Source of the DNA: Isurus oxyrinchus
Taxonomy: Eukaryota
NCBI GenBank assembly: GCA_026770705.1
Contig: JANJGN010000010.1
Location: 1,364,001-1,428,000 of the forward strand
Length of the DNA stretch: 64,000 nt
Reading direction: 5' to 3'
Notes under the pieces: generated by a model
Told to the model about the DNA's origin: nothing
Database searches by the model: none
What the model saw: the letters and a program-made list of their open reading frames with translations, nothing else
Part shown: one piece after another, positions 5,147 to 56,447 of the stretch
How the letters are laid out: each line of letters starts with the position of its first letter
Numbering within the stretch: position 1 is the stretch's first letter
Translations under genes and position numbers: made by a program

Positions 5147-5623
5147 CCATTTGAAACTGCTGCCGCTCAAATGTGCCCATCAGCACCTGTGCCTCTGATT
5201 GGATGAAGCTCCCTCACATGACCCACCAGCCAAAGACTTTTGTTATGGGCCCACTGATTGGTTGATTTGTGGCTTCAGCTCGGCCCTATTCACAATTTAC
5301 TATTGAACAGGATTTTATTCTTAACATAAGTTATATTAGACTCTCCGGATATATTAACGATGAATATGAAATGGAATACGAGGGGTGGGTTAAAGGGGAG
5401 GCATCTCAGTGAAACTGAAAATCTGGCAATCTGTTGGGACACTGGGATGCCTTGTTCAAAAGCTGGAATGAACCAGCAAAACCGGAACAGCTGCTCACCC
5501 ATGTTTTGTGGCATTTTATCAAGTGCCTTTTGAAAGTTCATGTACACAACATCAACCACATTACAAAAACAGAATTACCTGGAAAAACTCAGCAGGTCTG
5601 GCAGCATCGGCGGAGAAGAAAAG

Positions 5624-5662
5624 AGTTGACGTTTCGAGTCCTCATGACCCTTCCACAGAACT
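5624..5662 (-). ncRNA. Minimal hammerhead ribozyme (core variant CUGUGGA)
   Basis: Reverse-complement copy of the 10501-10539 motif in the left arm. Confidence 0.78.
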
Positions 5663-6054
5663 TGATTTCGAGTCCAAGAAAGAGTTGAAATATAAGCTGG
5701 TTTAAGGTGTGTGTGTGGGGGGCGGAGAGATAGAGAGAGAGGGAGGGGTGTGGTTGTGTAGACAAACAAGCAGTGATAGAAGCAGATCATCAAAAGATGT
5801 CAGCGACAATGGTACAATAGAACACATAGGTGTTAAAGTTAAAGTTGGTGATATTATCTAAACGAATGTGCTAATTAAGAATGGATGGTAGGGCACTCAA
5901 GGTATAGCTCTAGTGGGGGTGGGGGGAGCATAAGAGATTTTAAAATATTTAAAAGTAATGGAAATAGGTGGGAAAAGAAAAATCTATATAATTTATAGGG
6001 AAAAAAAAGGGAAAAAGGGGGAAACAGAAAGGGGGTGGGGATGGGGGAGGGAGC

Positions 6055-7803
6055 TCACGACCTAAAGTTGTTGAATTCAATATTTAGACCGGAAGGCTGT
6101 AAGGTGCCTAGTCGGAAGATGAGGTGTTGTTCCTCCAGTTTGCGTTGGGCTTCACTGGAACAATGCAGTAAGCCAAGGACAGACATGTGGGCAAGAGAGC
6201 AGGGTGGAGTGTTAAAATGGCAAGCGACAGGGAGGTTTGGATCATTCTTGCGGACAGACCGCAGGTGTTCTGCAAAGCGGTCGCCCAGTTTACGTTTGGT
6301 CTCTCCAATGTAGAGGAGACCACATTGGGAACAACGAATGCAGTAGACTAAGTTGGGGGAAATGCAAGTGAAATGCTGCTTCACTTGAAAGGAATGTTTG
6401 GGCCCTTGGACGGTGAGGAGAGAGGAAGTGAAGGGGCAGGTGTTACATCTTTTGAGTGGGCATGGGGTGGTGCCATAGGAGGGGGTTGAGGAGTAGGGGG
6501 TGATGGAGGAGTGGACCAGGGTGTCCCGGAGGGAGCGATCCCTACGGAATGCCGATAAGGGGGGTGAAGGGAAGATGTGTTTGGTGGTGGCATCATGCTG
6601 GAGTTGGCGGAAATGGCGGAGGATGATCCTTTGAATGCGGAGGCTGGTGGGGTGATAAGTGAGGACAAGGGAGACCCTATCATGTTTCTGGGAGGGAGGA
6701 GAAGGCGTGAGGGCGGATGCGCGGGAGATGGGCCGGACACGGTTGAGGGCCCTGTCAACGACCGTGGGTGGAAAACCTCGGTTAAGGAAGAAGGAGGACA
6801 TGTCAGAGGAACCGTTTTTGAAGGTAGCATCATCGGAACAGATGCGACGAAGGCGAAGGAACTGGGACAATGGGATGGAGTCCTTACAGGAAGCGGGGTG
6901 TGAGGAGCTGTAGTCGAGGTAGCTGTGGGAGTCGGTGGGTTTGTAGTGGATATTGGTGGACAGTCTATCACCAGAGATTGAGACAGAGAGGTCAAGGAAG
7001 GGAAGGGAAGTGTCAGAGATGGACCACGTGAAAATGATGGAGGGGTGGAGATTGGAAGCAAAATTAATAAATTTTTCCAAGTCCCGACGAGAGCATGAAG
7101 CGGCACCGAAGTAATCATCGATGTACCGGAGAAAAAGTTGTGGAAGGGGGCCGGGGTAGGACTGCAACAAGGAATGTTCCACATACCCCATAAAGAGACA
7201 GACATAGCTGGGGCCCATGCGGGTACCCATAGCCACACCTTTTATTTGGAGAAAGTGAGAGGAGTTGAAGGAGAAATTGTTCAACGTGAGAACAAGTTCA
7301 GCCAGATGGAGGAGAGTAGTGGTGGATGGGGATTGTTCAGGCCTCTGTTCGAGGAAGAAGCTAAGGGCCCTCAGACCATCCTGATGGGGGATGGAGGTGT
7401 AGAGGGATTGGACGTCCATGGTGAAGAGGAAGCGGTTGGAGCCAGGGAACTGGAAATTGTTGATGTGACGTAAGGTGTCAGAGGAATCACGGATGTAAGT
7501 GGGAAGGGACTGGACAAGGGGAGAGAGAAGGGAGTCAAGATAACGAGAGATGAGTTCTGTGGGGCAGGAGCAAGCTGAGACGATCGGTCTACTGGGGCAG
7601 TTCTGTTTGTGGATTTTGGGTAGGAGATAGAAGCGGGCCGTCCGAGGTTGGGCGACTATCAGGTTGGAAGCTGTGAGAGGGAGATCCCCAGAGGAGATGA
7701 GGTCAGTGACAGTCCTGGAAACAATGGCTTGATGTTCAGTGGTGGGGTCATGGTCCAGGGAAAGGTAGGAGGAAGTGTCTGCGAGTTGACGCTCAGCCTC
7801 CAC
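6055..7803 (-). CDS. Penelope-like RT + GIY-YIG endonuclease, 5'-truncated but uninterrupted
   Basis: FYLLPKIHK, RPIVS, DVQSLYTSIP, GVAMGTRMGP, RYIDD, LPFLD, CCHH-type Cys/His and LVYCIRC..C..LYIGET.R.L..RF.EH...E...GLN. The GTG start is not a real start; the frame continues to the inversion junction at ~7913. Confidence 0.9.
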   Translation of the reverse strand: MEAERQLADTSSYLSLDHDPTTEHQAIVSRTVTDLISSGDLPLTASNLIVAQPRTARFYLLPKIHKQNCPSRPIVSACSCPTELISRYLDSLLSPLVQSLPTYIRDSSDTLRHINNFQFPGSNRFLFTMDVQSLYTSIPHQDGLRALSFFLEQRPEQSPSTTTLLHLAELVLTLNNFSFNSSHFLQIKGVAMGTRMGPSYVCLFMGYVEHSLLQSYPGPLPQLFLRYIDDYFGAASCSRRDLEKFINFASNLHPSIIFTWSISDTSLPFLDLSVSISGDRLSTNIHYKPTDSHSYLDYSSSHPASCKDSIPLSQFLRLRRICSDDATFKNGSSDMSSFFLNRGFPPTVVDRALNRVRPISRASALTPSPPSQKHDRVSLVLTYHPTSLRIQRIILRHFRQLQHDATTKHIFPSPPLSAFRRDRSLRDTLVHSSITPYSSTPSYGTTPCPLKRCNTCPFTSSLLTVQGPKHSFQVKQHFTCISPNLVYCIRCSQCGLLYIGETKRKLGDRFAEHLRSVRKNDPNLPVACHFNTPPCSLAHMSVLGLLHCSSEAQRKLEEQHLIFRLGTLQPSGLNIEFNNFRS

Positions 7804-7913
7804 GAGGTAGAGGTCAGTGCGCCAGACAACAACAGCACCACCCTTGTCAGCGGGTTTGATGACAATGTCAGGGTTGGACCTGAGAGAATGGAGTGCAGTA
7901 AGTTCAGAGAGAG

Positions 7914-10110
7914 TCCCAGCCCCAGCCGTGTATTCACTATACCCCCTGACCTTCCCCTCTCCGATGCTGAACGTTCAGTGCTCAGCAAAGGACTTAGTTT
8001 CATACCCTTACGCCCTCACCTCAATGAATTTCGGGCTCGGCATGATACTGAACTCTTCTTTCGCCGTCTTCGTCTCCGGGCTCACTTCTTCGGGCAGGAG
8101 TCCTCTCCCAATTCAACGGATCCTTTTACCCATCTCCAATATTCTCCCTCCACCTGGACCCCTCCCTCTGGATTCTTACCTTCTCTTGATCTTTTCATTG
8201 AGAACTGTCGGCGCGACATTAGTCGTCTCAATTTCTTTGCTCCTCTCACCCATTCTAACCTGTCTCTCTCTGAACTTACTGCACTCCATTCTCTCAGGTC
8301 CAACCCTGACATTGTCATCAAACCCGCTGACAAGGGTGGTGCTGTTGTTGTCTGGCGCACTGACCTCTACCTCGTGGAGGCTGAGCGTCAACTCGCAGAC
8401 ACTTCCTCCTACCTTTCCCTGGACCATGACCCCACCACTGAACATCAAGCCATTGTTTCCAGGACTGTCACTGACCTCATCTCCTCTGGGGATCTCCCTC
8501 TCACAGCTTCCAACCTGATAGTCGCCCAACCTCGGACGGCCCGCTTCTATCTCCTACCCAAAATCCACAAACAGAACTGCCCCAGTAGACCGATCGTCTC
8601 AGCTTGCTCCTGCCCCACAGAACTCATCTCTCGTTATCTTGACTCCCTTCTCTCTCCCCTTGTCCAGTCCCTTCCCACTTACATCCGTGATTCCTCTGAC
8701 ACCTTACGTCACATCAACAATTTCCAGTTCCCTGGCTCCAACCGCTTCCTCTTCACCATGGACGTCCAATCCCTCTACACCTCCATCCCCCATCAGGATG
8801 GTCTGAGGGCCCTTAGCTTCTTCCTCGAACAGAGGCCCGAACAATCCCCATCCACCACTACTCTCCTCCGTCTGGCTGAATTGTTCTCACGTTGAACAAT
8901 TTCTCCTTCAACTCCTCTCACTTTCTCCAAATAAAAGGTGTGGCTGTGGGTACCCGCATGGGCCCCAGCTATGCCTGTCTCTTTATGGGGTATGTGGAAC
9001 ATTCCTTGTTGCAGTCCTACTCCGGCCCCCTTCCACAACTTTTTCTCCGGTACATCGATGATTACTTCGGTGCCGCTTCATGCTCTCGTTGGGACTTGGA
9101 AAAATTTATTAATTTTGCTTCCAATCTCCACCCCTCCATCATTTTCACGTGGTCCATCTCTGACACTTCCCTTCCCTTCCTTGACCTCTCTGTCTCAATC
9201 TCTGGTGATAGACTGTCCACCAATATCCATTACAAACCCACCGACTCCCACAGCTACCTCGACTACAGCTCCTCACACCCCGCTTCCTGTAAGGACTCCA
9301 TCCCATTCTCCCAGTTCCTTCGCCTTCGTCGCATCTGTTCCAATGATGCTACCTTCAAAAACAGTTCCTCTGACATGTCCTCCTTCTTCCTTAACCGAGG
9401 TTTTCCACCCACGGTCGTTGACAGGGCCCTCAACCGTGTCCGGCCCATCTCCCGCGCATCCGCCCTCACGCCTTCTCCTCCCTCCCAGAAACATGATAGG
9501 GTCCCCCTTGTCCTCACTTATCACCCCACCAGCCTCCGCATTCAAAGGATCATCCTCCGCCATTTCCGCCAACTCCAGCATGATGCCACCACCAAACACA
9601 TCTTCCCTTCACCCCCCCTTATCGGCATTCCGTAGGGATCGCTCCCTCCGGGACACTCTGGTCCACTCCTCCATCACCCCATACTCCTCAACCCCCTCCT
9701 ATGGCACCACCCCATGCCCACGCAAAAGATGTAACACCTGCCCCTTCACTTCCTCTCTCCTCACCGTCCAAGGGCCCAAACATTCCTTTCAAGTGAAGCA
9801 GCATTTCACTTGCATTTCCCCCAACTTAGTCTACTGCATTCATTGTTCCCAATGTGGTCTCCTCTACATTGGAGAGACCAAACGTAAACTGGGCGACCGC
9901 TTTGCAGAACACCTGCGGTCTGTCCGCAAGAATGATCCAAACCTCCCTGTCGCTTGCCATTTTAACACTCCACCCTGCTCTCTTGCCCACATGTCTGTCC
10001 TTGGCTTGCTGCATTGTTCCAGTGAAGCCCAACGCAAACTGGAGGAACAACACCTCATCTTCCGACTAGGCACCTTCCGGTCTGAATATTGAGTTCAACA
10101 ACTTTAGGTC
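7914..10110 (+). pseudogene. Penelope-like RT/GIY-YIG copy with frameshifts
   Basis: Same protein split over ORFs 7648-8895, 8892-9635 and 8938-10092. Relative to the left copy: 1-nt deletion ~8881, +1 C ~9615 and 8-nt deletion ~10076. Confidence 0.9.
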
Positions 10111-10500
10111 GTGAGCTCCCTCCCCCATCCCCACCCCCTTTCTGTTTCCCCCTTTTTCCCTTTTTTTTCCCTATAAATTTTATAGATTTTTCTTTTCCCA
10201 CCTATTTCCATTACTTTTAAATATTTTAAAATCTCTTATGCTCCCCCCACCCCCACTAGAGCTGTACCTTGAGTGCCCTACCATCCATTCTTAATTAGCA
10301 CATTCGTTTAGATAATATCACCAACTTTAACTTTAACACTTGTGTTCTTTTGTACCATTGTCGCTGACATCTTTTGATGATCTGCTTCTATCACTGCTTG
10401 TTTGTCTACACAACCACCTCTCTCTCTCTCTATCTCTCCGCCCCCCACACACACACCTTAAACCAGCTTATATTTCAACTCTTTCTTGGACTCGAAATCA

Positions 10501-10539
10501 AGTTCTGTCGAAGGGTCATGAGGACTCGAAACGTCAACT
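10501..10539 (+). ncRNA. Minimal type I hammerhead ribozyme (core variant CUGUCGA)
   Basis: AGUU-CUGUCGA-A-GGGUC-AUGAG-GACUC-GAAA-CGUC-AACU: stem I AGUU/AACU, stem II GGGUC/GACUC, palindromic ACGU stem III, GUC cleavage triplet (after 10535). Confidence 0.8.
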
Positions 10540-10649
10540 CTTTTCTTCTCCGCCGATGCTGCCAGACCTGCTGAGTTTTTCCAGGTAATTCTGTTTTTGT
10601 TTTGGATTTCCAGCATCCGCAGTTTTGTTTTGTCTTTATCAACCACATT

Positions 10650-10870
10650 ACCCTTATCTACTCTCTCTGTTACCTTATCAAAAAAACCCAGCAAGTTAGT
10701 TAAGCACAATTTGCCCTTAACAAATCCTTAATTAACCTGCATTTGCCTAAATGACTATTAATTTTGTCCTGAATTCATTTCTAGAAAATTCCCTACCATT
10801 GAGGTGAAACTGACTGGCTGGTGGTTGTTGAACTTATCTTTACCCTCTTTTTTGGACAAGGGTGTAACAA
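10650..10870 (-). mobile_element. CR1 RT fragment, continued at 5500-5562 across the Penelope insertion
   Basis: CLTNLLGFFDKVTERVDKGNVVD joins VVYMNFQKALDK. Confidence 0.8.
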
Positions 10871-15920: not shown

Positions 15921-17474
15921 TCAATCAAACAGTCTCTTCAGAAAGCTTTTCTTCATTGGCGTCTTTTTCAGTGTTGCTGGCGATTTCTTACGTGGGGATT
16001 TTATTGGTGTTCGCTTTATCTGCTTTTTCTTTTGTGGAGTTCGAATTCCTCTATGATGCTCGTTGCAAAAATACTTTGTGTTTTCCTGAGAAAACTGAAT
16101 CAGCTGTGATTCTGAGAGATCCATACACTGGGCGTGCACCCAGTGTCCATCATCCCCTTCACTGGAGCACAAAATCATTGCAGGTTTATTGAGTTCTGTC
16201 GAGTAATAAGGCACCCAGATGTTAACGTTCATTTTACAGGTGGAGCTGCATTTAATCCAGTAACCTTCCTCATCAGCATTATCCAAGTTCTCTGCATCAT
16301 CAGAGCAATCAGCTTCCACTTCAAAGTTAAATTCTTCTGAATCTTCAAACGTGCTGCATTCTTCTGGATCAGTAAAAGATTCCTGGCTGGCAGAGGCTTG
16401 GCTTTCTTCCTCTAACTGTCCAAAATTTGCTATATAAAAGAAGTGTGCCTCAGCTGTATCTTGCTTGCTTTCTCCTGGGATGCCGATTAACACAGTGCTG
16501 CTTCCCATATTGCTCCCAAACCAGGTTTTGCTTGCTTTAATATCATTTGACCATTCTGGAGGCTCCTTTTCCAGGATCTGAATGTTATCATTCTCCAAAA
16601 TGATGGTATTACAAATCATTCGTTTCTCGTTCTCAGATTCATAACCACCAACAATTACAAATTCATCTTTGCTCACTTGGGTCACTATTGCACTTGATAC
16701 GGAGATGCCACCATTGAGTATTGTACACTGTACACTTGGATAGGTCCTGAACAGATCAACTTTTAGACTAAGCAACCTTGCAGGGCGATGATTATTTTCA
16801 ATGGAATGGCCACCCAATATGTAGACAGTGTCAATTTTTGCAATGGAGACATGGAATGAAAACCCATCTTCTATTTCTGGAAGTGTATGGGATGTGCAGT
16901 TACCATTGTTTATATCAATCAGAAAAACCTGTGGTAAACAATCGACTACACTGTTCCAGTTTTCTGTGGTTCTTTGCCCTGGAGGCCGGTAACATCTACC
17001 CCCAAACAAGACACACATGGCTTGTCCCTTGTTCTGAATCACATTGATGCTGTGACCATATCTTCCTTGAGGGACATCCCCTTTAAGATTTTTCTCAATG
17101 CAGCGGAGCGATGTTCTCTTGTTACCATTGCTGCTGTAAACCATCATCAAATAAAGTAAGTTAGGTAATTCATTATTTGGATCTCTTCCACCGTGAATGA
17201 GATACAAAAGGCTGTTTGATTCGGAGGGATCGGAGTAATGAGTTATTGCAGGACAGCGCAGAGGAGGGAGGTAGCATGAGTCAGGCGAAAATGAAACAGC
17301 TTTCAGTTTGAGAATGTGACCTTTGAGATGAAGAAGAAAAACTCCCGTGCTGCAGGATCTTTTTGGCCACCCTTTCTGACCAAAGAAAAAGACCTCCCCA
17401 TGGAAATTGAACAACGAGAATCCCGGATAGATAAGCGTAGAATTGCTGCAATCTGAAACCATTTGCAGTGACAT
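15921..17474 (-). CDS. RAG2: V(D)J recombination-activating protein 2 (517 aa, single coding exon)
   Basis: Intact ORF with RAG2 hallmarks: MSLQMV start, FFFGQKGWPKRSC, SCYLPPLRCPA, RYGHSI, QRTTENWNSVVDC, acidic hinge (FEDSEEF), non-canonical PHD finger (GYWIKC..C...STELNKPAMI.C...GHWVHAQC...YFCNEH), C-terminal TPQK and KKSFLKRLFD. Confidence 0.99.
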   Translation of the reverse strand: MSLQMVSDCSNSTLIYPGFSLFNFHGEVFFFGQKGWPKRSCSTGVFLLHLKGHILKLKAVSFSPDSCYLPPLRCPAITHYSDPSESNSLLYLIHGGRDPNNELPNLLYLMMVYSSNGNKRTSLRCIEKNLKGDVPQGRYGHSINVIQNKGQAMCVLFGGRCYRPPGQRTTENWNSVVDCLPQVFLIDINNGNCTSHTLPEIEDGFSFHVSIAKIDTVYILGGHSIENNHRPARLLSLKVDLFRTYPSVQCTILNGGISVSSAIVTQVSKDEFVIVGGYESENEKRMICNTIILENDNIQILEKEPPEWSNDIKASKTWFGSNMGSSTVLIGIPGESKQDTAEAHFFYIANFGQLEEESQASASQESFTDPEECSTFEDSEEFNFEVEADCSDDAENLDNADEEGYWIKCSSTCKMNVNIWVPYYSTELNKPAMILCSSEGDDGHWVHAQCMDLSESQLIQFSQENTKYFCNEHHRGIRTPQKKKQIKRTPIKSPRKKSPATLKKTPMKKSFLKRLFD

Positions 17475-29085: not shown

Positions 29086-29470
29086 CAAGTAGCTAGAGGA
29101 AGGCACTTGTCCTGCTCAGTGATGTTGTCTCATTTTTAATATTGGATTTGTTGGATCCATCTGTCTGAGCTATCAGTTATACTTTCAAGTTTCAGCTTCT
29201 ATTGACCTTCAAATTAATTTTGATTTTAGCTGTTTACTATTATTAAATTGTTCAGCAGTTTGAAATGGTAACAGCAAACAGTTATCTTAATGTTTTTCTT
29301 TTTATCATTACATACAGTGGTCATATATCCCTGCTTTCAGTCTGTGTTTAGTGGTTTAGAAGCAAAAGAGAAGTAAAAGCACTTAGTGTTGCCCTTGTTA
29401 TTGTCACTTCACTGACATGATATAAAACAGCAGGTAACCTGTGTAGCAAAAATCAATCATTACAGATAAA

Positions 29471-29879
29471 AGCAAAATACTGTGGATGCTGGAAAACTGA
29501 AACAAAAACAAAAATTGCTGGAAAAACTCAGCAGGTCTGACAGAATCTGTGGAGAACAAGGACAGAGTTAACGTTTGGAGTCCAGATGACTTCTTCAGAA
29601 CTAAAGCGAAGTAGAAATCTGGTGAAATATATACTGTTTAAGGGGGAGTGGGACAGGTGAAGCTGAATAGAAGACCAGTGATAGCTGGAGGCAAAGGAGA
29701 GATTGCAAAAGATGTCATAAACAAAAGATCGAAGGGGTGTTGATGGTGGTGATATTGACTAAAGGAGGTGATAATGGTGACATTAAGAGTAGAAAGCAGG
29801 ATGAGCAAGTGACAGATGGCCCTAGTGGGGGTGGGGTGGGGGGAGGGGATTATGTGATAGAAAAGATCAAAATAGGCTA
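29471..29879 (-). mobile_element. Older Penelope-like terminal-repeat fragment with hammerhead (29566-29602, core CUGAAGA)
   Basis: Related to the left terminus of the large element. Flanked by AATCATTACA(G/A)ATAAA direct repeats at 29455-29470 and 29880-29895. Confidence 0.75.
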
Positions 29880-32911: not shown

Positions 32912-33140
32912 CTTGAATCAAGTTTTTCAGATAATTTTACCAGCACAGGACAAAGCACTTTAGGAGACTGAACTTGCTTGTAGAATTAAGAGGTGTAGAA
33001 CACTTGGTAAATACGTAACATGAAACAGCGTAGGAGATTTTTGAGAGAGTTTACAGCTGGGTGCAGATGGTACCAAATACTATCCTGATCAGAGTAACTG
33101 TCTGATTGCAGGTGCACAGCAGATGCAACAATGACGTGGT
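32912..33140 (-). promoter_or_regulatory. Candidate RAG2 non-coding exon 1 and promoter
   Basis: Minus-strand donor CAAG|GTAAGG (exon ends 32912). Upstream are E-boxes CAGCTG 33054, CAGATG 33064, CAGGTG 33109, CAGATG 33120, MYB site TAACTG 33095 and CRE-like TGACGT 33132, in unique DNA within IFTAP intron 1. Confidence 0.5.
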
Positions 33141-33326
33141 ATGTTCTAAATGAACAAGATAACCAATACATCAATGCATTTGCTACTATCCGCAAAGTTC
33201 AATCTTAAGTCCTTTATTAACACTCACATCCTCCCAAAACTTGGTCAAATTCTTCAAAGTGGTTAACAAAAACAGAATTACCTGGAAAAACTCAGCAGGT
33301 CTGGCAGCATTGGCGGAGAAGAAACG

Positions 33327-33365
33327 AGTTGACGTTTCGAGTCCTCATGACCCTTCGACAGAACT
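33327..33365 (-). ncRNA. Minimal hammerhead ribozyme (CUGUCGA)
   Basis: Same 39-nt motif on the minus strand. Confidence 0.75.
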
Positions 33366-33376
33366 TGTTCTATCGT

Positions 33377-33415
33377 AGTTCTGTGGAAGGGTCATGAGGA
33401 CTCGAAACGTCAACT
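33377..33415 (+). ncRNA. Minimal hammerhead ribozyme (CUGUGGA)
   Basis: agttctgtggaagggtcatgaggactcgaaacgtcaact. Confidence 0.75.
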
Positions 33416-34479
33416 CTTTTCTTCTCCGCCGATGTTGCCAGACCTGCTGAGTTTTTCCAGGTAATTCTGTTTTTGTTTTGGATTTCCAGTATCCGCAGTT
33501 TTTTTGTTTTTATCTTCAAAGTGGTTAGTTATCTTATTATGAATCTCATTTTAAATTAAAACCGGGGCTTCAATATTAAGGAGAGACTTTCTGCTGGTTT
33601 ATGCCAGTGATTTCAGTGCAACCTGGGTGGAATTGTACAAACCACAAAATAATTGAGGCATTTTAAATGTGCATGACGCCCAAAACTACTTTGTGTTTTG
33701 TGTGATCTTTTACACTGGGTTCAGTATTCAGTCTGACCCCCTACACCATCTTCCAACTAATTGCGCTTTTTGGAAAAGCTCCTCAGACTGTGCTCTATTT
33801 TAGACATTGCAGGTACTAAGTTTAAGTTTTTTTTAGAGTTTATCATGTCAAAAAATTTTTACTAAGAAACTGAGGTGTAAATTAAGAAACTATTAAATAG
33901 TTCTGTGTAGTTTTTTAAAGTAATTTTTAGTGATTTAAAACCAAGTTACATACAGATGTAGGATTGCACACCCTTATTACAAATGCTTATTTTTGGTGAT
34001 AAACCTATTTTCAGTTATATTAATAAAGTTGTATCAGGTTAGCACTCTTAAATCCGTCTATGAATACTCTTTAATGGAAAGAAACGACAGATTTACGTTC
34101 TATAACGCTGCCTAATTGTGCTGGTTCATTGAAGATTTTACATTTCTGATTAAACAAATTATTTTTAGCAGAAACTTGGACTGTAACCTAACCCGTGTAA
34201 TTCTGAGCTGTAATTTCCTGATTCTACCAAAGTGGAAACTCTGCTCCAATTTAATATGATTTTTAGCAAAAAACATTTTCTAAAAAGAATCACCCAAGCT
34301 GCATGTTGTGGAAGACAGTGGTTATGTTTATATGAAGTTGTTTGTGTTATAATGCAAATACACACTAATATTTATTCAGTAACCAGACAGATTCAGGTGG
34401 CAGCTCAATAATAATGGTAAATAGATGATAGAAGGTGCTCAGGATCAGTTCTAAAAAGCATTGTACTCTTGATTATAAG

Positions 34480-43269: not shown

Positions 43270-44360
43270 TGAGGAAATATCATCTCTGCATCCAGTCTGT
43301 CCGCCCCTGTCAGAATTTTATACGTTTCAAAGAGATCCTCTCTCATTCTTCTAATCTCCAGTGAATATAGGCCTAGCCGGCCCAATCCCTTCTCATTTGA
43401 CAATCCTGCCATCCCAGGAATCAGTCTGGTGAACCTTCGCTGCACTCCCTCTATGACAAGTATGTCCTTTCTTAGGTAAGGAGACCAAAACTGCACACAA
43501 TACTCCAGGTGTGGCCTCACCAAGGGCCTATACAGCTGCAGTAAGACATCCTTGCTCCTGTACTCAAGTCCTCTTGCAATGAAGGCCAACATACCATTTG
43601 CCTTCTTAACTGTTCGCTGCACCTGCATGCTTGCTTTCAGTGATTGGTGTACAAGGACACCCAGGTCCCTTTATACATCAACATTTCCCAATCTTATCGT
43701 CATTTAAATAATACTCTGCCATTCTGTTTTTCCTATCAAAGTGGATAACTTCACACTTATCCATCTTATACTGCATCTGCCATGTATTTGCCCACTCACT
43801 CAACCTGTCTAATTAAAGGAAAATACTGCGGAGGCTGGAAATCTGAAATAAAAACAGAAAATGCTGGAAAAACTCAGCAGGTCTGTTAGCATCTGTGGAG
43901 AGAGAAACAGTTAACGTTTCAAGTCCATAGGACAGCTCTGAAGAAGAGTCAAACGCACTCGAAAATGTTAACTCTGTTTCTGCCTCCACAGATGTTGTCA
44001 GATCTGCTGAGTTTTTCCAGCATTTTCTGTTTTTAAATCACCTTGAAATCTCTTAACGCCTTCCTCATTGCTCATATTCCCACCAAGTTTCATGTCATCA
44101 GCAAACTTGTAAATATTACATTTAGTTCCCTCATTCAAATCATTGGTATATATTGTGAATAACTGGGGCCCAAGCACCGATCCCTGTGGTACCCCACTAG
44201 TCACCGCCTGCCACCCTGAAAAAGACCTGTTTATTCCTACTCGCTGTTTCTTGTCTGCTAACCAATTCTCAATCCATGCCAATATATGACCCCAATCCCA
44301 TGTGCTTTAATTACACACTAATCCCTTACGTGTGACTGTATCAAAAACTTTCTGAAAATT
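43270..44360 (-). mobile_element. CR1 LINE RT fragment (interrupted at 43813-44035)
   Basis: SGVPQGSVLGPQLFTIY, KFADD, VRPHLEYCVQFWSP. Confidence 0.88.
43813..44035. mobile_element. Older palindromic Penelope derivative inserted in CR1; hammerhead at 43934-43973 (plus, CUGAAGA)
   Basis: Inverted arms aaaaacagaaaatgctggaaaaactcagcag / ctgctgagtttttccagcattttctgttttt, tail on the left, CUGAAGA-A-GAGU..ACUC-GAAA. Confidence 0.75.
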
Positions 44361-56105: not shown

Positions 56106-56200
56106 TTAAAAATAAAAAAATACTGGAAATACTCAGCAGGTCAGCGTCTATGGAGAGAAACAGAAATAATGTTTCAGGCTGATGATCTTTCATTAGAACA
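56106..56200 (-). mobile_element. Degenerate Penelope-terminus fragment
   Basis: tactggaaatactcagcaggtcagcgtctatggagagaaacag...gtttcagg..gatctttcattagaac resembles the hammerhead-bearing terminus. Confidence 0.5.
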
Positions 56201-56447
56201 GGTTACTTGCCAGTTAGCTGTTGGTGAGAATCCTTCAATGTGATTGGCTGCTTAATCTGTTTGATGACAGCACTTTTGCTGAACCCAGACTCTCCTGTAG
56301 TTGTCCGTAGAAAGGAGAAAGATTGCTAGATCTTTGTGAGCAACTTCATTTGAAATTAGTGATGAGTGCTACTGAGCAAAATACCCAGGCCCATATGTTG
56401 TATCTTTCATGTAACTACTCCTACCATTCTTTTATATTCTAGATTAA

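What the first reader, a model, noticed from the sequence alone, without database searches (positions are those of the whole stretch)
33251..33527. 247-bp double-hammerhead palindromic mini-retroelement with a perfect 15-bp TSD next to the candidate RAG2 promoter
Seen: two 100-bp inverted arms, each ending exactly at the 5' edge of a hammerhead stem I, an 11-nt spacer, a 36-nt one-sided tail and a perfect TSD (TCTTCAAAGTGGTTA). The sequence is near-identical to the termini of the protein-coding Penelope element in this window. Known: Penelope terminal repeats carry minimal hammerheads, and non-autonomous hammerhead retroelements exist. Inference: this is a young MITE-like family mobilised by Penelope RT/GIY-YIG. 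Any transcript would fold into a ~100-bp hairpin in which the ribozyme is masked by its own antisense copy. That may be what makes it tolerable in IFTAP intron 1, ~140 bp from the E-box cluster.
Basis: partly seen in the sequence, partly recalled or inferred. Interest (0 to 1): 0.8.

Follow-up and report, generated by a model that had tools for sequence, protein, structure and literature searches.

The report
Fold-back Penelope retrotransposon end fragment
The 247-bp palindrome is a real, recent insertion made of two head-to-head copies of the last ~100 bases of a very abundant Penelope-like jumping gene; this is a known by-product of how these elements insert and is most likely not a new self-copying mini-element.

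Summary
Observation confirmed. There are two 101-nt inverted arms (96% complementary), an 11-nt spacer, a 35-nt tail on one side only and a perfect 15-bp target duplication. The arms are 96-98% identical to the 3' end of the RT+GIY-YIG element at 5565-10637.

A contig of a closely related organism B carries the exact empty site with one copy of the 15-mer, so this is a genuine, lineage-specific insertion.

The 5-kb element has the same build: ~2.35-kb arms, a 37-nt one-sided tail and a 14-bp duplication. Published work describes all of these features as typical of Penelope-like insertions.

Raw reads put the 3' end at roughly 10^4-10^5 copies. Most copies run on into the element body, and more than 670 other arm-to-arm joints were seen. 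That points to repeated de novo formation, not to one self-propagating palindrome family.

The "hammerhead" is a minimal hammerhead-like motif with U instead of the invariant A6. Rfam does not detect it.

One point is unresolved. About 165 organism B reads cross this same spacer, so a multi-copy junction is not excluded.

The scan had already noted such fold-back Penelope ends elsewhere in this genome. The verdict is ordinary: a new member of a known kind.

The parts
33251..33265 (.). left copy of the 15-bp target-site duplication TCTTCAAAGTGGTTA
   Evidence: D1, 100% identical. The organism B contig has the 15-mer only once (record 17).
33266..33365 (-). left arm: antisense copy of the last ~100 nt of the Penelope-like element, ending at the tail-less 3' end. 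It may extend 2 nt further (TG at 33366-33367 matches the element body).
   Evidence: I1; 98.1% to the element, query positions 2586-2688
33327..33365 (-). hammerhead-like motif of the left arm: AGUU-CUGUCGA-A-GGGUC-AUGAG-GACUC-GAAA-CG-UC-AACU
   Evidence: Position 6 is U instead of A. No Rfam hit.
33366..33376 (.). 11-nt spacer TGTTCTATCGT. TG continues the left copy, and GTTCTATCG resembles a repeat of the sense-arm start GTTCTGTCG.
   Evidence: (X1 loose end at 33375 reads AAGGGTCATGA); no source elsewhere in the window
33377..33477 (+). right arm: sense copy of the last ~100 nt of the element, starting at AGTT
   Evidence: (95.6% including the tail)
33377..33415 (+). hammerhead-like motif of the right arm (core CUGUGGA). 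The predicted cleavage site would lie after C33411.
   Evidence: Folding of the isolated motif gives no thermodynamic support (z +0.4).
33478..33512 (+). 35-nt one-sided 'tail', the optional 3' extension typical of Penelope-like insertions
   Evidence: Homologous to the tail at 10601-10637. About half of family 3' ends carry it (depth). Described in PMC8557442 and PMC11167929.
33513..33527 (.). right copy of the 15-bp target-site duplication
   Evidence: record 17
5565..10637 (+). related 5-kb Penelope-like insertion that is itself a fold-back. Antisense arm 5563-7913, unique centre 7914-8263, sense arm 8264-10600, tail 10601-10637. The 14-bp duplication ATCAACCACATTAC lies at 5551-5564 and 10638-10651.
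   Evidence: RT and GIY-YIG by Pfam
43821..44034 (.). older (~80-83%) fold-back of a related subfamily. The tail is on the left arm, the sense arm starts at AGCT (43934), and the core is the canonical CUGAAGA.

Best explanation
This is a dead-end product of one integration event of a very abundant Penelope-like retrotransposon (PLE, encoding RT plus a GIY-YIG endonuclease).

Inferred mechanism: the endonuclease cut both strands of the target 15 bp apart. Reverse transcription was primed from the two target ends at the two adjacent internal start sites near the element's 3' end. One start site gives an end with the 35-nt tail and the other gives an end without it. Both short cDNAs reached the region just upstream of the hammerhead-like motif. 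They were then joined head to head by self-priming or template switching at a short inverted microhomology (GAACT..AGTTC), leaving an 11-nt filler.

Shown: the anatomy, the derivation from the element, the empty site in a sister organism, the very high copy number of the 3' end and the diversity of other fold-back joints.

Inferred: the order of events, the use of two templates, and that the insert cannot copy itself. Its transcript would be a ~100-bp double-stranded hairpin, and the hammerhead-like motif (U at invariant position 6) probably does not cleave.
For: Anatomy.

Derivation from the element: searches give 96-98% identity to the 3' end of the element at 5565-10637, which encodes RT and GIY-YIG.

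Same build at a different scale: the 5-kb copy has ~2.35-kb arms, a 37-nt one-sided tail and a 14-bp duplication. An older fold-back at 43821-44034 has its tail on the other arm.

Empty site: an organism B contig is contiguous from 33250 to 33513, with flanks about 1.4% diverged (record 17).

Read depths (X22 raw reads): flank depth is about 1, arms 8,500-35,000 and tail about 22,000. At the inner arm edges, 5,918 and 7,592 reads continue into the element body. There are 15 listed plus 656 unlisted different arm-to-arm joints.

Arm differences: the arms differ at 4 of 101 sites. By my rough estimate from the variant frequencies, that is about what two random family members would differ by.

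Literature:
- PMC8557442: an inverted 5'-truncated copy and a 30-40-bp tail at one end are typical.
- PMC11167929: the tail lies between two RT start sites, and both target strands are cleaved and extended.
- PMC3846280: palindromes at the inverted junctions suggest self-priming.
- PMC4209133: pairs of minimal hammerheads 100-700 bp apart on opposite strands are ascribed to truncated elements.
Against: About 165-230 raw reads of organism B, which lacks this insertion, cross the spacer. Of these, 70-86% carry the reference letters (table 3). Unique de novo junctions do not predict this.

Three of five insertions in the window have a 5' end within a few nt of the hammerhead 5' edge. The inversion point is therefore not random, which also fits a discrete short template.

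No genome-wide table of copies could be made.
Confidence: 0.7

Rival explanations
1. The palindrome is a copy of a pre-existing palindromic master. On this view it belongs to a non-autonomous fold-back family that carries a reverse-transcription entry site at each end and is mobilised in trans by the Penelope RT/endonuclease.
For: Spacer depth of about 165-230 in organism B raw reads, mostly with the reference letters, against a flank depth of about 1. The arms differ at 4 sites, as would be expected in an old master. Earlier first-reader notes of this scan list other 235-273-bp fold-backs with ~94-100-bp arms (unchecked). PMC3846280 shows that pLTR sequences alone suffice for mobilisation in trans.
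Against: More than 670 different arm-to-arm joints. The in-window fold-backs have different junctions and arm lengths. Contig-based depth over the spacer in organism B is only about 2-35 copy-equivalents (X5). The spacer reads are heterogeneous (variants at 13-30% at four positions). A transcript folding into a ~100-bp hairpin would be a poor template. Nothing visible would define the RNA 5' end at the left boundary.
Confidence: 0.22
2. It is an assembly or sequencing artefact, for example a fold-back chimera of long reads inside a plain 5'-truncated insertion.
For: No independent contig spans the palindrome interior (table 8). Unitigs break inside repeats.
Against: Contigs from the source sample cover both outer junctions (records 1 and 8). 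There is a perfect target duplication and an exact empty site in organism B. The arms differ at 4 sites and a spacer is present, which is not the perfect copy an artefact would give. The same architecture recurs at 5565-10637 and 43821-44034.
Confidence: 0.04
3. It is a class II (DNA transposon) MITE with terminal inverted repeats.
For: Terminal inverted repeats and a flanking direct repeat.
Against: The whole insert is two copies of a retroelement 3' end. The ends are asymmetric because of the tail. The duplication is long and variable in length across the family (15 and 14 bp). No transposase partner is present.
Confidence: 0.01

Closest known systems
Penelope-like element (EN+) insertions with an adjacent inverted 5'-truncated copy and a one-sided 30-40-bp tail (Evgen'ev & Arkhipova 2005; Arkhipova 2006; Craig et al. 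2021, PMC8557442; Arkhipova et al. 2013, PMC3846280)
   Same: Head-to-head inverted copies. A tail at one end only (35 nt). A short target duplication. A small palindrome at the inverted junction. A hammerhead-type motif about 100 nt from the 3' end. An RT plus GIY-YIG partner in the same genome.
   Different: Both copies are truncated to ~100 nt, so nothing of the element body or ORF is left. The published schemes show the inverted copy beside a longer or full-length copy.
Minimal hammerhead ribozymes of Penelope-like elements (Cervera & De la Pena 2014, PMC4209133)
   Same: [quoted passage not shown] That paper also reports pairs of motifs 100-700 bp apart on opposite strands, ascribed to truncated elements.
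   Different: The core reads CUGU(C/G/U)GA, with U at the invariant position A6, in all four young copies in the window. Older copies in the window have CUGAAGA. No Rfam model detects the motif, and cleavage was not tested.
Non-LTR retrozymes / hammerhead-bearing non-autonomous derivatives of Penelope pLTRs (bioRxiv 10.64898/2026.07.22.740005)
   Same: Short non-coding sequence derived from a Penelope pLTR and carrying a hammerhead-type motif.
   Different: Retrozymes are head-to-tail tandem repeats thought to pass through circular RNA. This insert is a single head-to-head fold-back with a target duplication, with no tandem repeat.
The Poseidon element of Anolis studied in vitro (PMC11167929)
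   Same: Two adjacent internal RT start sites 30-40 nt apart explain the optional tail. Both target strands are cleaved and extended. The hammerhead lies about 100 nt upstream of the start sites. Here the two ends lie 35-37 nt apart in similar TGTTTT(T)G contexts.
   Different: This is a different host and family. Nothing about this element was tested biochemically.

Membership tests
Penelope-like element insertion (EN+ PLE) | Sequence derives from an element encoding a PLE-type RT and a GIY-YIG endonuclease | tested here: met
   Arms are 98.1% and 95.6% identical to the 3' end of the element at 5565-10637. Its ORFs hit RVT_1 (E 2.6e-08, above cutoff) and GIY-YIG (E 5.8e-04, 20.5 bits, just under the 22.6-bit cutoff).
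Penelope-like element insertion (EN+ PLE) | Inverted 5'-truncated copy adjacent, giving terminal inverted repeats | tested here: met
   101-nt arms, 96% complementary. The same is seen at 5565-10637.
Penelope-like element insertion (EN+ PLE) | Optional 30-40-bp tail at one end only | tested here: met
   35 nt at 33478-33512, on the right arm only. 37 nt at 10601-10637. Read depth over the tail is about half that of the arms.
Penelope-like element insertion (EN+ PLE) | Short target-site duplication made on insertion | tested here: met
   Perfect 15-bp repeat. Empty site with one copy in organism B (record 17).
Hammerhead ribozyme (type I, minimal PLE variant) | Catalytic core C3-U4-G5-A6-N7-G8-A9 plus G12-A13-A14 and a UH cleavage site | tested here: not met
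   The core is CUGU(C/G)GA in all four young arms, so position 6 is U. GAAA and UC are present. Older copies have CUGAAGA.
Hammerhead ribozyme (type I, minimal PLE variant) | Helices I and II flanking the core, conserved by base pairing | tested here: inconclusive
   91.7% of cells are paired against 21-48% for slid controls, but there is only one compensatory change in 7 sequences, and the structure was drawn from these same sequences. Folding of the isolated motif gives no support.
Hammerhead ribozyme (type I, minimal PLE variant) | Match to a curated hammerhead covariance model | tested here: not met
   No hammerhead family at gathering score or at E up to 10. Minimal motifs without helix III may simply lie outside those models.
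Hammerhead ribozyme (type I, minimal PLE variant) | Self-cleavage | not testable with these tools
   Needs in vitro transcription of single-arm, dimeric and full-palindrome RNAs.
Self-propagating non-autonomous (MITE-like) fold-back family | Many loci with the same internal junction, each with different flanks and its own target duplication | tested here: inconclusive
   Against: more than 670 other joints, and most copies run into the element body. For: about 165-230 reads cross this spacer in organism B.
Non-LTR retrozyme | Head-to-tail tandem repeats, each with a hammerhead | tested here: not met
   The two motifs lie on opposite strands, head to head, and there is no tandem repeat.

The most novel reading that the evidence does not exclude
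The fold-back with this exact junction, including its 11-nt spacer, is itself multi-copy, at roughly 10^2 copies even in the sister organism whose orthologous site is empty. It would then be a palindromic Penelope-end unit with a reverse-transcription entry site at each end that is copied as a unit. That would be a previously undescribed fold-back type of non-autonomous Penelope derivative. Its inversion point would be fixed by a 5-nt inverted microhomology at the 5' edge of the hammerhead-like motif.
Probability: 0.2. Interest if true: 0.55.

Novelty: new member of a known kind. Interest (0 to 1): 0.22.

Why it matters
As a single locus it matters little. It is one more short fold-back fragment of a retrotransposon family that fills this genome. 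It is absent from a close relative, so it is not a conserved part of the RAG2/IFTAP control region.

It has three uses:
- It is a clean, dated example with an exact empty site of the Penelope integration signature: two ends, one tail, a duplication.
- It is a presence/absence marker between organisms A and B.
- It is a possible source of a long intronic double-stranded RNA hairpin about 100 bp upstream of the region noted as the RAG2 promoter.

The family as a whole could inform the still unclear Penelope integration mechanism. The relevant material is the 10^4-10^5 ends, the many fold-back joints, an apparent hot spot at the hammerhead 5' edge, and a fixed U6 core. That is a genome-wide study, not a property of this locus.

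Tried and rejected
- **Rfam:** scans at gathering score on the whole window and at E up to 10 on 33150-33650 and 10050-10700 found no hammerhead. The only hits were generic sub-threshold matches of the long hairpin to plant and animal miRNA precursor families. I do not take these as evidence of a miRNA.
- **Folding of isolated 44-nt motifs:** no better than shuffles, which is uninformative for a minimal, dimer-dependent hammerhead.
- **The copy at 29464-29602:** I first read it as truncated at AGTT. nhmmer and reading show that homology continues about 280 nt further upstream, so I withdrew that reading.
- **Hammerhead cleavage as the cause of the arm ends:** rejected. The predicted cut site (after C33411) lies 35 nt inside the arm, and both arms contain the whole motif.
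- **More genomic copies:** The scan of metagenome contigs for the motif was blank. The search of earlier findings by sequence was blank.
- **Source of the spacer:** a search elsewhere in the window or element found none.
- **Class II MITE and assembly artefact:** considered and rejected (see rival explanations).
- **Not done:** the RAG2 promoter and IFTAP intron context was not tested beyond locating the RAG2 coding exon.

Full report
**1. What is there**

- Inverted arms lie at 33265-33365 and 33377-33477 (101 nt, 96% complementary).
- An 11-nt spacer, TGTTCTATCGT, separates them.
- A stretch of 35 nt (33478-33512) is present on the right side only.
- A perfect 15-nt direct repeat, TCTTCAAAGTGGTTA, lies at 33251-33265 and 33513-33527. 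It was the only direct repeat found in 1.2 kb.
- The insert between the two 15-mers is 247 nt.

**2. Where it comes from**

A 56-nt core of the arm occurs four times in the window: twice in this insert, and at 5598 (+) and 10510 (-). BLAST of the element's right half against the window aligns the left arm at 98.1%, and the right arm plus tail at 95.6%, to the extreme 3' end of the element at 5565-10637. That element's ORFs hit the reverse transcriptase family above Pfam's cutoff, and the GIY-YIG family just below it. This is the domain pair of endonuclease-bearing Penelope-like elements (PLEs).

**3. The 5-kb element has the same build**

Searches show that the 5-kb copy is itself one large fold-back.
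- Antisense arm 5563-7913, unique centre of 350 nt, sense arm 8264-10600.
- A 37-nt tail on the right side only (10601-10637).
- A 14-bp target duplication, ATCAACCACATTAC.

The mini-insert and the 'autonomous' copy therefore share one architecture and one tail asymmetry. They differ in where the inversion lies: about 100 nt versus about 2,350 nt from the 3' end. A third, older fold-back of a related subfamily lies at 43821-44034. Its tail is on the opposite arm and its junction is different.

**4. Is it a real insertion?**

Yes. Contigs of the source sample cover both outer junctions (records 1 and 8). A 2,687-nt contig of a closely related organism B aligns to 33120-33250 and then, without a break in the contig, to 33513-33660 (record 17). 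That is the exact empty site with one copy of the 15-mer. The flanks differ by about 1.4%. All ten organism B runs that hold the stretch (X5-X14) hold about half of its words, which may reflect the missing insertion; only X5 was laid and shown to lack it. The insertion is therefore specific to lineage A, or polymorphic within it, and is recent.

**5. How common is the family, and are inversion points fixed?**

Raw whole-genome reads of organism B (X22, about 1.9 Gb read) give these depths:

| Region | Depth |
|---|---|
| Unique flanks | about 1 |
| Left arm | 8,500-10,000 |
| Right arm | 19,000, rising to 35,000 toward the 3' end |
| Tail | about 22,000 |

This corresponds to the order of 10^4-10^5 copies of the 3' end, about half of them with the tail.

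At the inner edges of the arms, 5,918 reads (left) and 7,592 reads (right) continue with a consensus that is the element body. That is roughly 60-70% of the depth there, so most copies that reach this point are longer.

The tool listed 15 different joints between the left and right arms and reported 656 more. Fold-backs with many other inversion points therefore exist.

**6. Evidence that cuts the other way**

The inversion point here is probably not random.
- Both arms of the mini-insert start at AGTT, the left with 2 extra nt.
- The sense arm of the old fold-back starts at the homologous AGCT (43934).
- A still older solo fragment at 56121-56202 starts within 2 nt of it.

That is three of five insertions in the window. 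The copy at 29476-29857 is not truncated there. I first thought it was and withdrew that.

The family consensus recovered from the loose ends reads ...GGACTCGAACT-CA-AGTTCTG.... This is a 5-nt inverted microhomology exactly at the junction. It would favour self-priming or template switching there. Arkhipova et al. inferred self-priming from palindromes at inverted junctions (PMC3846280).

The second point is unexplained. About 165-230 organism B reads cross the 11-nt spacer with margin, and 70-86% of them carry the reference letters (table 3), although the orthologous site in B is empty. Contig-based depths for the same places give only about 2-35 copy-equivalents. Three readings remain open:
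- this junction is multi-copy and replicates as a fold-back unit;
- it is an inherited 5' palindrome of an element subfamily;
- the 'spacer' is ordinary element sequence of a subfamily.

**7. The hammerhead**

Rfam finds no hammerhead at the curated thresholds or at E up to 10. By eye, and in the alignment of seven copies, each arm contains a motif with the layout Cervera and De la Pena describe for minimal PLE hammerheads (PMC4209133):
- helix I: AGUU/AACU (4 bp);
- core: CUGU(C/G)GA;
- an unpaired A;
- helix II: GGGUC/GACUC, closed by G-C;
- GAAA, then a palindromic CG in place of helix III;
- UC at the cleavage site.

Pairing is kept in 91.7% of cells against 21-48% for slid controls, with one compensatory change. 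That support is weak, because the structure was drawn from these same sequences.

The core has U where the invariant A6 should be, in all four young copies. The older copies at 29.5 kb and 43.9 kb have the canonical CUGAAGA. From established mutational work on the hammerhead (my own knowledge, not checked here), changes at A6 reduce cleavage severely. Minimal PLE hammerheads are weak even when canonical (PMC4209133), and cleavage was dispensable for insertion of an Anolis PLE in vitro (PMC11167929).

I therefore call it a hammerhead-derived motif, not a demonstrated ribozyme. The arm ends are not set by ribozyme cleavage, because the predicted cut site lies 35 nt inside each arm.

**8. Comparison with what is known**

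Craig et al. (PMC8557442) state that PLE insertions are highly 5'-truncated. [quoted passage not shown]

The in vitro study of an Anolis PLE (PMC11167929) shows that reverse transcription starts at two adjacent internal sites whose spacing equals the tail, and that both target strands are cleaved and extended. Here the two kinds of end lie 35-37 nt apart in similar T-rich contexts (D8).

Cervera and De la Pena already noted pairs of minimal hammerheads 100-700 bp apart on opposite strands and ascribed them to truncated PLEs. Every element of the finding's anatomy is therefore a published property of PLE insertions. The only particular feature is that both copies are cut down to ~100 nt.

**9. 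Most likely mechanism (inferred)**

- Staggered cuts 15 bp apart.
- cDNA synthesis from both target ends, one from the tail-proximal start site and one from the other.
- Both cDNAs stop or switch at the microhomology just upstream of the motif.
- Joining with a short filler.

The arms differ at 4 of 101 positions, and each arm carries variants that are minor in the family (places 33311, 33325, 33385, 33435). That is more than the roughly 1.4 differences expected since an insertion younger than the A-B split (my estimate; borderline, p about 0.05). It is about what two random family members would differ by. This mildly favours two template molecules, or descent from an older master, over simple snap-back copying.

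**10. Consequences at the locus**

The RAG2 coding exon is at 15921-17474 on the minus strand. The insert therefore lies about 16 kb upstream of it. That places it about 100 bp beyond the region another note of this scan proposes as RAG2 exon 1 and promoter (untested).

That it sits in IFTAP intron 1 agrees with the known head-to-head overlap of RAG2 and IFTAP in human (my own knowledge). I did not test it here.

A plus-strand transcript through the insert would fold into a ~100-bp hairpin (-191.8 kcal/mol, z -28), and the motif could not form within it. Whether this makes the insert 'tolerable' is speculation. Organism B does without it. In the one run labelled RNA (a guess by the tool), the flanks had zero depth, so there is no sign that this locus is expressed there (X16).

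**11. Verdict**

This is an ordinary, young fold-back end fragment of a PLE, a new member of a known kind. Earlier notes of this scan describe the same class of inserts and the same U6 core in other windows of this genome. One follow-up there reached the same reading as mine. I used those notes as leads only.

The open point is whether this exact junction is multi-copy. I put the chance of a truly replicating fold-back family at about 0.2.

Noticed in passing
window 5563-7913 and 8264-10600: The arms of the 5-kb fold-back are not evenly diverged. The inner 617 nt next to the centre are 100% identical. The outer ~1,720 nt carry all 24 substitutions and about 5 indel events. Even decay would give this with p of about 1e-4 (own arithmetic). 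This suggests either arm-to-arm conversion near the centre, or a switch between two RNA templates during synthesis.
   Followed up: partly
window 10509/5654 and 33385/33357: In both young fold-backs the two arms differ at hammerhead position N7: one arm has C and the other G. G is carried by only about 5-7% of family reads (place 33385). This may be coincidence in a small sample or a sign of something systematic.
   Followed up: no
window 33366-33376 (reads of organism B): About 165-230 raw reads of an organism whose orthologous site is empty cross the 11-nt spacer, mostly with the reference letters. The junction or something very like it is multi-copy elsewhere in that genome.
   Followed up: partly
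window 29559-29602 (-), 43934-43986 (+), 56150-56204 (-): Older, diverged copies of related subfamilies carry the canonical hammerhead core CUGAAGA at 29.5 kb and 43.9 kb, or CUAAUGA at 56 kb. The U6 core of the young family is therefore a derived state.
   Followed up: partly
window 10580-10600 and 33457-33477: A good splice-donor-like site, CAG|GTAAT, sits just before the tail-less 3' end of the element. An AUG lies in loop II of the hammerhead-like motif. This recalls the published overlap of hammerhead, ORF start and 5'-UTR intron in other Penelope-like elements.
   Followed up: no
window 15921-17474 (-): An intact 517-aa RAG2 ORF (Pfam RAG2 at E 1.1e-150, plus the RAG2 PHD domain).
   Followed up: partly
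window 33333-33409: Below-threshold Rfam matches of the palindrome to several miRNA precursor families (MIR7696, MIR1033, mir-1303; 40-54 bits against cutoffs of 70-107). These are generic long-hairpin matches, not evidence of a miRNA gene.
   Followed up: yes
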